A stretch of DNA of 60,846 bases, filler included, from Hausera hauseri (taxonomy: Eukaryota): assembly GCA_046269625.1 (NCBI GenBank). It is 11 parts of 11 records of this genome, joined end to end, with 100 filler letters (N's around TTAATTAATTAA, not from the genome) between each part and the next. Parts side by side here need not be neighbours in the genome. Positions count along the whole stretch, not along the records: positions 29,797 to 35,418 come from JBJURY010219077.1; 10 more parts are not named here. One strand, written 5' to 3'. The notes below the pieces were generated by a model. It had not been told where the DNA came from, did no database searches, and saw nothing but the letters and a program-made list of their open reading frames with translations. Positions 29,799-33,100 of this stretch are shown one piece after another; the stretch's first letter is position 1, and every line of letters starts with the position of its first letter. The translations under genes and the position numbers were made by a program.

Positions 29799-30130
29799 AA
29801 AATGGTAAATGTAACGTCGCATATCCCTTATCGACATGAAACACGATCGAGTAGGTTCGGAAACGAAAGATTGGAATGCTTTGGCGATGCCGTTATTAAA
29901 CTGATTACAAGTGTTCTTTTGTTTTATGTTTCCCAAACTGTCCGAGGGGCATCTCAACACCTTTTGACAGGCTCTTGTTCAGAATCATTATCTTGCTGAT
30001 TGGTCTGTGAGATTGGGTTTCCATAAATTTTTACTCTACACGCATAATACTGATTTCTTATAAGACTCAACAATCATTCATGCCAGATCAGATGCTTACA
30101 AAAATTTCCTTGACGTGCAAGTAATCGAAT
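29799..30130 (+). pseudogene. Drosha-like RNase III domain (RIIIDa)
   Basis: NERLECFGDAVIKLITSVLLFY / FPKLSEGHLNTF*QALVQNHYLADWSVRLGFHKFLLYTHNTDFL*DSTIIHARSDAYKNFL; one frameshift (~29925), stops at 29965 and 30061. Confidence 0.88.
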
Positions 30131-33100
30131 TGACCGCAAAAAGGAAACCTTTGGGTCTTACCACACCTGCGGCCGCATTCTCTGATGGAATTAAACTTAT
30201 CTGGAAAATTGGGACCTGTCTGGGCAGAACCACGTTTTTAACGGCTCACCCAACAGCTACAAGACACGATACAAAGTATGTGGCGAAACCACACTACCCA
30301 GCTTGTTGTTTATCAACGTCATTTTCCATCCACCTTTTTGTAAATAATAAATTAATACATACCGCTCATACAACACAATGTATCGACACAATACAATTAT
30401 ATGACCTCATTCATAAAGCCACCGCCTTCAATGACTTTTATTTGACTCACAATGGATTTACTTTTACTGATTTCCCACACATCATATCCTCACAATACTA
30501 CCTCTGTGTACACATCCACCCTAGAGTCGGCTGCGGTATGATTTCTTCACCAATCAATGACATCACAGATAAGGTGACCACAAAATACAAATCCATTGTC
30601 TACTACCCCAAATCAAACCATCTAACTCCTTCAACCTATACTAGTTTTTTTCACAAAACCCCTACAATTACACCTTCACATTGCTCTGAATATATTACAG
30701 ACAATAAAAACTATAGTAATACTTGGCTCCACTTCCACCAACTTTGGCTACAATCCAACGGCATTACCGATTCGTTAACCAAAGCCCATAATCTACACTC
30801 TTATACCAAACTCCATGAAGACCTCAATCCATAACTTACTGGACATCTTTTAACACCCTGACCCTTATACGCAATTGTTCAACGCTGTAATAAAACTAAC
30901 AGAACCACCAATTGACTCAATAATACAACGATTCTTTAATGAAAATGTAATGAGGACACAAAAACCTAGTGATTACTTACGCACCTCATTGGCCCACTTA
31001 CGTACCCTGGGTTCCACCAAGGAACACAATCCGGATCTACTCCGCCGATATTTCCTTAATGCTTTACCCATTTAAATTAGGGCTTTACTTACTATTGTTG
31101 AGGATTCTACAGCTTTAGATAAACTAGCTGAATTGGCCGATAAAGCACACGAAGTTTTACAAATACAATCACAACCCATCATATCAGCCGCAACCGACGA
31201 CAGTCAACGACATACATCTATTGAACACCAACTGAACCAGTTACGTGCCGAAAATGCGGCACTACAACATACAATCCACAACATCAATGATAAACTGAAT
31301 GACCTTTCCTCACATCGACGGAATGCTTCCTCCCCTCATCAAACGCGTTCTGTCTCAAGAAATCGAACACCGTCACCAACGCGGTCATTTACATGTTATT
31401 ACCATAACAAATTTAATAACAAAGCAAATAAATGCTGTTTAGGGTGTAGATATTATTTGCCGAATCTACAGTCAGATAACATAGTTTTCATCTATCACGC
31501 AAAATTTGGATTTAATGCTCGGATTTGTATTTCAGACTGTAACTATAAAACTAATCCTAATTACACGACTGATAGACGTTCTAGTTTCTCCAACAATAAC
31601 CGTCCTAACTCACCAATCCAAAAAAGTGATTTCGCCTCCAGTATTCACAAGAGAATCTGGCAAAGGCAACTTACCTAATTCTCCTTGCCGACACACTTGT
31701 TCTTCAGTCTTTACACTAAAAGCTGCTATCTCTACTTCTAACATTCAATCAATAGACTTTTTCATCGATACCGGTGCAGCGATCTCATTATTACCACTTT
31801 CTTTTCCGGTTCAGAATTCTTCATTAAAACAAAACCGTTATACACCGCCTTCGATCAACCCCTTCATATTGCCTGAACTTGCAAATTATCATTTCCTCTC
31901 CCAGAATTTTCCTCACCATTTCATTGGACGTTTACAATAGCTAATGTCCAGACAGCAATACTTGGCTCCGATTTCCTGTCACATTATAACTTTTTAGTCG
32001 ATAGTAACCAACGATGCGTGAAATCAAATACACCTGAAGACTGTAGTACAGGAATAGACAGCGCCCCGGCGACAGCACAGCCAACGGTAAGTAGACAATC
32101 AATCTTAAAACAATCAAAACCTCATACTAATTCTCTTAACTATCAAGTTTTACTTCGTAAGCTGTCAAATGACAATGTCGATAGTCTGCCACAGCTCAAT
32201 AGCGTCACTGTCGATCTTGCGTCTTCAGTAAAATCATTGAACAACAACACTTACTCAAATAAGGTTTCAGATACGACCATTCTACATCAAACTCTACTCG
32301 ATTCCTTACCAACAATCAACTAACATTCACCAAGTACTGCTAGCAAGCTTGGTTCATCGTAATTCCAAATATTCCAGCAACTATCCGTAAGCTTACAACA
32401 ATTCATCAACACTTCTTGTTATTGTATATTTCAAAAAGATCGAAAATTCACCCCTGTAAAGGGCATTTACAACCATATAATTACACCACACCAAAGACGA
32501 ATTCGACAAAAAGTCCGTCCACTGTCACCACGTCGCAAGCATGCAGCAGAAGCGGAATTTTTTAAACTCGAACAATCATAATTGTCCGTAGATCTAAATC
32601 CCCATGGTCTTCGCCTCTCCACGTTTTCCAAAAAAGATGGATCCTTTCGAACATGCGGCAATTACCGCCAGCTTAATACTTTAACCATAATGGATACATA
32701 CCCACTACCATTAATCAAAAACATATTACATTGGCCTCATACTACTACAGTCTATTCAACAACTGATTTTGCCAAAGCTTACCACTAAATTCCTGTCGTA
32801 CCGGAAGACATCGAGAAAACTGCAGTTACCACACATTCCGGACTTTATAAGTACTTGTACATGCCTTTGGGTCTCCGGAACGCTGCACAAATTTTTCAGC
32901 GACGCGTCGATTCAATCCTTTCAGACTTCTCTTTTGCACACCCATATATTGACAATATCTTTGTTGCTTCTTCTTCTGTTAAACAACACGAGGAACACTT
33001 ACGATCTATCTTCAAACAATTTAATCAGTTAAACCTACAGATTTATTTTGCAAAATGTAACTTCTTCCAAAAACGCGTTTATTTTCTTGGACATATTATC

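What the first reader, a model, noticed from the sequence alone, without database searches (positions are those of the whole stretch)
29799..30834. Drosha-type RNase III domain in frame with the Gag of a Ty3/gypsy retrotransposon
Seen: MVNVTSHIPYRHETRSSRFGNERLECFGDAVIKLITSVLLFY, a frameshift near 29925, then FPKLSEGHLNTF*QALVQNHYLA...KFLLYTH...HARSDAYKNFL. Known (from recall): this aligns motif for motif with Drosha RIIIDa (LINIMSRL...NERLEFLGDAVVEFLTSVHLYYLFPSLEEGGLATYRTAIVQNQHLA...RFMLYAH...HAMANCFEAL), rather than with a generic RNase III. Seen: the second half is in the same frame as ORF 30115-30834, which continues through a linker and a ubiquitin-like domain into Gag. No LTR, PBS or intron is visible between them. 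Inference: the element captured a host microRNA-processing nuclease domain as an N-terminal Gag leader. It could degrade dsRNA/siRNA precursors or poison the Microprocessor, which would make it a transposon-encoded anti-silencing module.
Basis: partly seen in the sequence, partly recalled or inferred. Interest (0 to 1): 0.92.

Follow-up and report, generated by a model that had tools for sequence, protein, structure and literature searches.

The report
Dead Drosha fragment joined to retrotransposon
A broken, partial copy of a flatworm's own microRNA-processing nuclease gene (Drosha) sits directly in front of a decayed gypsy-type retrotransposon and was copied a few times with it, but it looks like a dead passenger, not a working anti-silencing weapon.

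Summary
Window 29799-30105 is a Drosha RIIIDa-type RNase III fragment. Read with X at its three breaks, it scores 142 bits (E 8e-46) against a flatworm Drosha profile. In a tree it is sister (100/99) to one flatworm Drosha, UniParc UPI00060A965B. It has a frameshift at about 29925 and in-frame stops at 29965 and 30061. Its second half shares a frame with ORF 30115-30834. Downstream lies a decayed CsRn1-clade Ty3/gypsy element with a CHCC Gag box, protease, RT, RNase H and integrase.

Only about two thirds of one RNase III domain is present, and homology stops exactly at the 'FEA' catalytic motif, a likely exon boundary. The catalytic Glu there is Lys. There is no RIIIDb and no dsRBD. The ubiquitin-like domain has no support.

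A public run's contigs confirm the junction. They show the Drosha part at roughly 7-12 copy equivalents, against hundreds to thousands for the element. Three quarters of the depth at the frameshift shares the broken state, so copying went on after the frame was lost.

Best reading (0.5): a host gene fragment joined to the element through RNA and carried as an inert passenger. The main rival (0.33) is chance juxtaposition plus segmental duplication. Interest is moderate to low.

The parts
29799..29924 (+). Drosha RIIIDa-derived fragment, first part (frame 3). It is cut by the piece's 5' edge. It holds the RNase III signature NERLECFGDAV at 29862-29894.
   Evidence: Pfam Ribonucleas_3_3 E 3e-4, below the cut-off because it is a fragment. 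Best solved-structure hit is human Drosha RIIIDa. 56% identical to Opisthorchis felineus Drosha-type protein TGZ64116.1 and 77% to UPI00060A965B.
29925..29928 (+). Frameshift place: the reading passes from frame 3 to frame 1.
   Evidence: Translations and tblastn against Drosha proteins. One sister contig carries two extra letters behind 29924 and so keeps one frame (depth 15.4 of 61.6); the rest of the depth shares the window's state.
29926..30105 (+). Drosha RIIIDa-derived fragment, second part (frame 1). In-frame stops lie at 29965-29967 and 30061-30063. Lys at 30100-30102 stands where Drosha has the catalytic Glu of 'FEA'. Homology ends at 30105.
   Evidence: tblastn 60-67% identity to flatworm Drosha. 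Profile alignment ends at fragment residue 102. A profile of the Drosha stretch after FEA scores -2.2 bits on the following 75 codons. Changes at invariant columns are listed.
30106..30246 (+). Linker of unknown origin. It is open only in frame 1, and its base composition (no GC skew) resembles the Drosha part.
   Evidence: Frames 2 and 3 have stops here. The GC-skew change point is at about 30245. The chance that a given frame stays open here is 0.067. No homologue was found.
30247..30834 (+). Upstream ORF of the retroelement (frame 1), C-rich and G-poor like the rest of the element. It is probably an N-terminal extension of Gag. No homologue and no recognised domain.
   Evidence: Openness is far beyond chance (P about 1e-4 per frame). 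Codon-position periodicity p 0.007, with G highest at position 1 as in the element's other coding parts. Summed contig depth 855-4,700. Seven contigs carry two extra letters behind 30799, which puts this ORF and Gag in one frame in those copies. No Pfam, solved-structure, homologue or Atlas hit.
30875..31678 (+). Gag (frame 2) with an in-frame stop at 31073-31075. The CsRn1-clade CHCC box C-X2-H-X9-C-X3-C lies at 31394-31447.
   Evidence: ORFs and translations. The motif definition comes from PMC2582038.
31506..31940 (+). Protease region (frame 3), with the D-T-G triplet at 31767-31775.
   Evidence: Translation. There was no Pfam hit, so this rests on reading the motif only.
32582..33133 (+). 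Reverse transcriptase (frame 2), broken into pieces. The catalytic box reads YIDN at 32945-32956.
   Evidence: Pfam RVT_1 E 2.3e-13. Translation.
33048..33800 (+). RNase H domain of the element (frame 3).
   Evidence: Pfam RT_RNaseH_2 E 2e-20 and RT_RNaseH E 6e-20.
33895..34890 (+). Integrase: zinc-binding and core domains in frame 1, C-terminal part in frame 2.
   Evidence: Pfam Integrase_H2C2 E 1.6e-14 and rve E 2.8e-11.
34891..35418 (+). C/T-rich, low-complexity tail after integrase, cut by the piece's 3' edge. It is not a recognisable LTR.
   Evidence: No similarity to 30100-30900 beyond shuffled controls. GC skew down to -0.64.

Best explanation
The piece is a dead chimera from a neodermatan flatworm genome. 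A partial copy of the host lineage's Drosha gene is visible over 102 codons of RNase III domain a. It ends exactly at the 'FEA' catalytic motif, where flatworm Drosha gene models point to an exon boundary. It is joined head to tail, in the same reading frame, to the upstream ORF of a CsRn1-clade Ty3/gypsy retrotransposon. No LTR or primer-binding site lies between them.

Most likely (inferred, not shown) the join was made at the RNA level. Either a read-through or spliced Drosha-element transcript was reverse-transcribed, or the reverse transcriptase switched template. This is how LTR retroelements are known to pick up host gene fragments. The chimera then reached a handful of copies.

The Drosha part was an inert passenger:
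- It is an incomplete domain.
- It lacks its obligatory partner domain RIIIDb.
- It has lost a catalytic glutamate.
- It carries a frameshift and two stops.
- It went on being copied after the frameshift had happened.

The element in this copy is itself dead, with stops and frameshifts throughout and an RT catalytic box that reads YIDN.
For: - Origin in Drosha. The tree puts the fragment sister to UPI00060A965B at 100/99. Its own branch is five times longer (0.31 against 0.062), as expected for relaxed constraint.
- Exon-bounded end: the profile alignment stops at FEA. Two flatworm gene models (P0032, P0028) carry an insertion that starts right after FEA with the same 'VMG' translation, as a read-through 5' splice site would.
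- No intron at one known site: an 80-aa Logan ORF of a trematode Drosha (P0005) leaves the protein after 'EVIS', which suggests an intron there. The window is continuous across that point. This is a lead only.
- Real junction: an exact contig spans 30029-30324.
- Multi-copy: depth is 61.6 at 29924, and the first two bins average 193 and 406, against 5-9 for contigs of single copies. One contig appears to join 30040 to 30414.
- In-frame continuity: only frame 1 is open over 30064-30831. The chance of the linker being open in that frame and the frames agreeing is about 0.067 x 1/3. The upstream ORF is coding-like.
- Passenger status: Glu to Lys at FEA, plus changes at other invariant columns. 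46 of 61.6 depth units share the frameshifted state. No RIIIDb or dsRBD anywhere in the piece.
Against: - The piece is cut at 29797, so no upstream LTR or PBS can be seen, and it is not shown that the Drosha part lies inside an element.
- The GC-skew boundary is at about 30245, not at the end of Drosha homology (30105). The 140-base linker could therefore be host DNA such as intron.
- Ten codons after FEA resemble the insertion in P0032 weakly. If that insertion is intron, this favours a genomic DNA origin over a spliced one.
- Copy numbers come from summed contig depths at 80% likeness, which the tool itself warns are not copy numbers.
- The host's real Drosha gene may be one of the contigs laid there.
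- Segmental duplication would give the same depth pattern.
- Intron positions in this organism's own Drosha gene are unknown.
Confidence: 0.5

Rival explanations
1. Chance juxtaposition. A DNA-level pseudogene copy of Drosha (an exon plus the start of its intron) happens to lie next to a 5'-truncated gypsy element. The few extra copies arose by segmental duplication of the whole region. The shared frame is coincidence.
For: - The composition of 29797-30245 is uniform and unlike the element; the change point is at about 30245.
- There is weak similarity of the ten codons after FEA to the probable intron read-through in P0032.
- There is no LTR or PBS at the boundary.
- Depth over the Drosha part is far lower than over the element.
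- The density of disabling lesions is higher in the Drosha part (3 in 88 codons) than in the element (about 1 per 100 codons).
Against: - It needs three separate events: a truncation that removed LTR, PBS and leader, a frame match with an open linker (about 0.02 by chance), and a later several-fold duplication.
- The fragment is continuous where a trematode relative seems to have an intron.
Confidence: 0.33
2. A subfamily of the element carried, while active, a Drosha-derived N-terminal Gag leader under selection. It acted on dsRNA or interfered with the Microprocessor (for example by binding Drosha's partners). This copy is simply a dead member of that subfamily.
For: - In-frame continuity from the Drosha part through the linker into a real ORF.
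- A sister contig that keeps one frame at the frameshift place.
- The signature motif and three of four catalytic acidic positions are kept, and changes are somewhat rarer at flatworm-invariant columns (7 of 43) than at variable ones (19 of 56).
Against: - The domain is truncated at the second catalytic motif and lacks its C-terminal helices.
- By established knowledge, Drosha's RIIIDa cuts only as an intramolecular dimer with RIIIDb. RIIIDb is absent.
- The catalytic Glu is Lys.
- Most of the depth shares the frameshift, so copying did not need the frame.
- None of the 120 closest Drosha-region proteins in the protein collection carries RT or integrase domains.
- The representatives search gave no fusion protein.
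Confidence: 0.07
3. This is the organism's real Drosha gene with an element in its intron, and the lesions are assembly errors.
For: Homology ends at a probable exon boundary.
Against: - An independent Logan contig reproduces 30029-30324 exactly, including the stop at 30061.
- The fragment's branch is five times longer than its nearest Drosha's, and seven invariant columns are changed.
- No further Drosha exon lies anywhere in the remaining 5.3 kb.
- Flatworms are reported to have a single conserved drsh-1 gene (PMC5594548).
Confidence: 0.03

Closest known systems
Drosha (class 3 RNase III), RNase III domain a, of neodermatan flatworms. Nearest: UniParc UPI00060A965B. Named relative: Opisthorchis felineus TGZ64116.1.
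   Same: 73 of 99 comparable residues are identical to UPI00060A965B. The order of motifs is the same: signature NERLE-x-x-GDAV, then FP-x-L-x-EG-x-L, LVQN, LYTH, and ARSD-x-[FY]. The two are sisters in the tree at 100/99.
   Different: Only about 102 codons are present. They stop at the FEA motif. Glu is replaced by Lys there. There is one frameshift and two stops. There is no RIIIDb, no dsRBD and no N-terminal region within the piece.
CsRn1-clade Ty3/gypsy LTR retrotransposons of trematodes and insects (CsRn1, PwRn1, AgCR; PMC2582038)
   Same: The Gag box is CX2HX9CX3C. The domain order is PR-RT-RH-IN. The internal length is about 4 kb.
   Different: No LTRs and no tRNA-Trp primer-binding site were found in the piece. 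There is an extra coding-like ORF of about 200 codons upstream of Gag. A host Drosha fragment sits in front. The copy is heavily decayed.
Host gene fragments carried by LTR retroelements: maize Bs1, and oncogene capture by retroviruses (own knowledge; reviews listed were not read)
   Same: A host coding fragment is joined in frame to a gag-side ORF of an LTR-type element, at low copy number relative to the parent family.
   Different: Location inside a complete element (between LTRs) is not shown here. The captured piece is from a small-RNA pathway gene and is already broken.
Viral class 1 RNase III silencing suppressors, such as the sweet potato chlorotic stunt virus RNase3 (own knowledge)
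   Same: An RNase III-type sequence associated with a selfish genetic element.
   Different: Those are complete, homodimerising, catalytically intact RNase III domains with a dsRBD. This one is a truncated, mutated, Drosha-type half-site without a partner.

Membership tests
RNase III domain (Pfam PF00636 / PF14622) | Signature motif ERLEFLGD, which holds the first pair of catalytic acidic residues | tested here: met
   NERLECFGDAV lies at 29862-29894. It aligns to the motif in Pfam, in human Drosha and in flatworm Drosha.
RNase III domain (Pfam PF00636 / PF14622) | Second catalytic pair (Asp ... Glu of 'D-x-x-E-A') | tested here: not met
   Asp is kept (30091-30093), but the Glu position is Lys (30100-30102). 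The column is invariant in all 29 Drosha proteins compared.
RNase III domain (Pfam PF00636 / PF14622) | A complete domain of about 130-150 residues that scores above the curated cut-off | tested here: not met
   The first piece scores 21.4 bits against a cut-off of 35. Homology ends at profile position 848, at FEA. The next 75 codons score -2.2 bits against the profile of the rest of the domain.
RNase III domain (Pfam PF00636 / PF14622) | Uninterrupted reading frame | tested here: not met
   Frameshift at 29925-29928 and stops at 29965 and 30061. The second stop is reproduced in an exact Logan contig.
Drosha (class 3 RNase III) | Closest to Drosha RIIIDa rather than to RIIIDb, Dicer or bacterial RNase III | tested here: met
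   Solved-structure ranking: Drosha 4e-4, bacterial 0.03, Dicer-like 0.2; RIIIDa 15.1 bits against RIIIDb 4.8. Against TGZ64116.1: 50.8 bits for RIIIDa, 25.0 for RIIIDb. Tree placement inside flatworm Drosha.
Drosha (class 3 RNase III) | Tandem RIIIDa + RIIIDb + dsRBD architecture | tested here: not met
   tblastn of 121 Drosha proteins finds only the RIIIDa stretch within 29799-30135 and nothing else in the piece. What lies upstream of 29797 cannot be seen.
Ty3/gypsy LTR retrotransposon, CsRn1 clade | Pol domain order RT - RNase H - integrase | tested here: met
   RVT_1 at 32855-33133, RT_RNaseH at 33048-33800, Integrase_H2C2 plus rve at 33895-34476.
Ty3/gypsy LTR retrotransposon, CsRn1 clade | Gag CHCC signature CX2HX9CX3C | tested here: met
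   C-YY-H-(9)-C-(3)-C at 31394-31447, by direct reading. Definition from PMC2582038.
Ty3/gypsy LTR retrotransposon, CsRn1 clade | Pair of LTRs with TGT...A(C/A/T)A ends and a 4-bp target duplication | tested here: not met
   No direct repeat of LTR size in the piece. 30100-30900 against 34800-35418 scores below shuffled controls. The piece is cut at both ends, so LTRs may lie outside it.
Ty3/gypsy LTR retrotransposon, CsRn1 clade | tRNA-Trp primer-binding site TGGTGA(G/C)CCCG(T/A) next to the 5' LTR | tested here: inconclusive
   Only 3-mismatch matches were found: 5 observed against 6.15 expected by chance. One lies at 30572-30583 on the + strand, preceded by ATA.
Ubiquitin-like (beta-grasp) domain | Sequence or fold match to ubiquitin-family domains | tested here: not met
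   No Pfam hit at E up to 1. No solved-structure sequence hit at E up to 10. The single-sequence AlphaFold model has pLDDT 54.5; a strand-strand-helix-strand-strand order is predicted, but the C-terminal third is unmodelled. No ubiquitin-like chain appears among Foldseek hits. A weak or missing match is not proof of absence.

The most novel reading that the evidence does not exclude
When it was active, a small subfamily of a CsRn1-clade retrotransposon in a parasitic flatworm expressed a Gag precursor with an N-terminal leader taken from the host's Drosha RIIIDa. It was kept for a time by selection. As a catalytically useless half-site it could titrate Drosha's partners or its pri-miRNA-like substrates. 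That would make it a transposon-borne decoy of the microRNA/dsRNA machinery. The copy in the window would be a fossil of that subfamily.
Probability: 0.07. Interest if true: 0.85.

Novelty: new member of a known kind. Interest (0 to 1): 0.33.

Why it matters
If the chimera moved as part of the element, it is an animal example of an LTR retrotransposon carrying a fragment of a small-RNA-pathway gene in frame with Gag. Such material could in principle evolve into a counter-defence. As it stands, it documents how host exons are scattered by retroelements in flatworm genomes. It also warns annotators that a Drosha-like hit here is a pseudogene fragment, not a second drsh-1 gene. Flatworms are reported to have a single such gene (PMC5594548).

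Tried and rejected
Because of this, neither the contig upstream of 29797 nor any sister copy could be fetched.

SEARCHES THAT FOUND NOTHING
- Homologue search of 30064-30834: none, within a length band of 141-448 aa only.
- ESM Atlas on ORF 30115-30834: no usable hit, and low recognition.
- Homologue search with the 65-aa ORF for short sister fragments: no candidates.
- Representatives search with the 41-aa piece: only two true hits, both ordinary Drosha. The other three were low-complexity false positives.
- tRNA genes, tandem repeats and Rfam families: none relevant.
- Literature search for an RNase III or Drosha domain in a retrotransposon: nothing found.

IDEAS REJECTED
- Ubiquitin-like domain: no support.
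- The linker 30106-30330 as the diverged rest of RIIIDa: rejected at -2.2 bits. An apparent tblastn extension with P0018 does not hold up.
- An LTR at 30217-30571 (TGT...ATA) followed by a decayed PBS: considered. It was rejected as the main reading because 30247-30831 is a significant, codon-periodic ORF and nothing matches it at the 3' end.
- tRNA-Trp primer-binding site: not above chance.

NOT DONE
The broken fragment was read through only with X at the breaks.
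Full report
WHAT IS THERE

The piece 29797-35418 holds two things.

The first is a Drosha-type RNase III fragment at its 5' edge.
- It reads in frame 3 over 29799-29924, including the signature NERLECFGDAV at 29862-29894.
- The reading then passes to frame 1 at 29925-29928 and goes on to 30105.
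- There are in-frame stops at 29965-29967 and 30061-30063.

The second is a decayed Ty3/gypsy element.
- Gag lies at 30875-31678 in frame 2, with a stop at 31073.
- A D-T-G protease triplet lies at 31767-31775.
- RVT_1 lies at 32855-33133, RT_RNaseH at 33048-33800, and Integrase_H2C2 plus rve at 33895-34476. These are spread over all three frames.
- Gag carries C-X2-H-X9-C-X3-C at 31394-31447. This is the CHCC signature that defines the CsRn1 clade of trematodes and insects (PMC2582038).
- The RT catalytic box reads YIDN (32945-32956).

IS IT DROSHA?

Yes.
- The 41-residue first piece hits Pfam Ribonucleas_3_3 (E 3e-4).
- Among solved structures it hits human Drosha RIIIDa best (E 4e-4), ahead of bacterial RNase III and a Dicer-like protein. 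RIIIDa scores well above RIIIDb.
- The 31-residue piece after the first stop aligns collinearly to the next Drosha stretch.
- A scan of 1.84 billion representative proteins gave only two true hits. One is a 1,410-aa protein with two RNase III domains and a dsRBD from Opisthorchis felineus (TGZ64116.1). The other is an 80-aa exon-like Logan ORF of a trematode Drosha.
- With 120 Drosha orthologues fetched, tblastn shows that the fragment is best matched by UniParc UPI00060A965B: 77% and 60% identity in the two parts, 73 of 99 residues overall.
- A profile of 30 flatworm Drosha proteins, run against the fragment read with X at the three breaks, gives 142 bits, E 8e-46.
- A maximum-likelihood tree places the fragment as sister to UPI00060A965B (100/99) inside the neodermatan flatworm clade. 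Its terminal branch is 0.31, against 0.062 for its sister.

The organism is therefore a flatworm of, or near, that protein's lineage. The sequencing run's organism is coded and is not known to me.

HOW MUCH OF DROSHA, AND IN WHAT STATE?

- The visible part covers 102 codons and is cut by the piece's edge upstream.
- Downstream, homology stops exactly after the codons aligned to 'SDAFEA' (30088-30105). A profile of the following Drosha stretch scores -2.2 bits on the next 75 codons.
- No other frame or strand of the piece holds any further Drosha sequence.
- Two flatworm gene models (P0032 and a Mesocestoides protein) carry an insertion that begins right after FEA with the same 'VMG'. That is what a read-through 5' splice site would give. 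The end of homology therefore probably coincides with an exon boundary.
- The Glu of FEA, a catalytic residue by established knowledge of RNase III, is Lys here.
- Six further columns that are invariant in 29 Drosha proteins are also changed. These include an Arg turned into a stop.
- The RNase III fold continues for some 40 residues after this motif, and Drosha's RIIIDa works only paired with RIIIDb. As encoded here, the fragment cannot be a nuclease.

THE JUNCTION

- From 30064 to 30831 only frame 1 is open, and it is the frame of the Drosha second half.
- Region 30247-30831 is a real ORF. The chance of such an open frame is about 1e-4. Its codon-position composition is periodic (p 0.007), with G highest at position 1 as in the element's known coding parts. 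It shares the element's strong C-over-G skew.
- The skew change point is at about 30245, so the 140-base linker 30106-30246 resembles the Drosha part in composition.
- The linker being open in the right frame, combined with the two frames agreeing, has a chance of about 0.02.
- In this copy Gag proper is in frame 2. Seven contigs of the public run carry two extra letters behind 30799, which puts the upstream ORF and Gag in one frame in those copies. The upstream ORF is thus probably a Gag extension of this family.
- It has no detectable homologue or domain.
- The proposed ubiquitin-like domain is unsupported.
- No LTR pair, no convincing tRNA-Trp primer-binding site and no tRNA gene are present.

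COPIES

One public run holds the stretch, kept as Logan contigs. Laid at 80% likeness:
- 10,338 contigs fall on the piece.
- Summed depth is 1,400-29,000 over gag-pol.
- Towards the 5' end it falls from 4,696 (30737-30924) through 3,077, 1,526, 855 and 406 to 193 (29797-29984).
- It is 61.6 at place 29924. Contigs of individual copies have depth 4.6-9.0.
- An exact 296-base contig spans 30029-30324, so the junction and the second stop are real.
- One contig (depth 15.4) has two extra letters at the frameshift place and so keeps a single frame there. It may be a less decayed copy or the host's real gene.
- The other 46 depth units share the window's state.
- One contig appears to join 30040 to 30414.

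My reading is that the Drosha part exists in roughly 7-12 copy equivalents, far fewer than the element, and that it was still duplicated after its frame had broken. These are summed contig depths, which the tool warns are not copy numbers. This is the weakest link in the argument.

EXPLANATION

I favour (0.5) a chimera made through RNA and then carried as an inert passenger. The join could have been a read-through or spliced transcript, or template switching during reverse transcription. The evidence for this is:
- the exon-bounded end of homology;
- continuity across a place where a trematode relative seems to have an intron (a lead only);
- the lack of LTR or PBS at the join;
- the shared frame;
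- the low multi-copy state.

The main rival (0.33) is a DNA-level Drosha pseudogene next to a truncated element, multiplied by segmental duplication. It is favoured by the composition boundary at 30245 and by a weak resemblance of the ten codons after FEA to the probable intron read-through in P0032.

The real gene with assembly errors gets 0.03. Flatworms are reported to have one conserved drsh-1 gene (PMC5594548).

LIMITS

- Sister copies and the sequence upstream of 29797 could therefore not be read.

Noticed in passing
window 32945-32956: The reverse transcriptase catalytic box reads Y-I-D-N instead of Y-x-D-D. Apart from its stops and frameshifts, this copy's RT would therefore be inactive.
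   Followed up: no
window 31480-31540: A second, imperfect CHCC-like box (x-Y-H-X9-C-X3-C, lacking the first Cys) follows the complete one in Gag. PMC2582038 describes a single box, imperfect in some elements.
   Followed up: no
window 30247-35418: The whole element has a strong, strand-wide excess of C over G (about -0.16 per base, down to -0.64 in the tail). The Drosha part has none. Differences among the family's contigs are dominated by transitions (C>T 206, T>C 227, A>G 133, G>A 106 places).
   Followed up: partly
window 34891-35418: After integrase, an open frame continues for about 110 codons into a Pro/Ser/Thr- and then Leu-rich low-complexity tail. It has no LTR similarity and no family hit. 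Its contig depth (800-1,260) is like that of the 5' upstream ORF.
   Followed up: partly
window 33933-34308: The integrase core bins collect 27,000-29,000 summed depth, five times the rest of pol. At 80% likeness this stretch evidently recruits many other gypsy families of the genome.
   Followed up: no
protein P0005 (80 aa, Logan contig of 1,195 bases): This exon-like ORF of a trematode Drosha leaves the protein sequence right after '...GDAVIEVIS'. That suggests an intron there in that species. P0032 and P0028 suggest another intron right after 'FEA'. The DNA could not be fetched to check either.
   Followed up: partly
window 30170-30177: A GCGGCCGC octamer lies in the otherwise AT-rich linker. 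It is probably meaningless.
   Followed up: no
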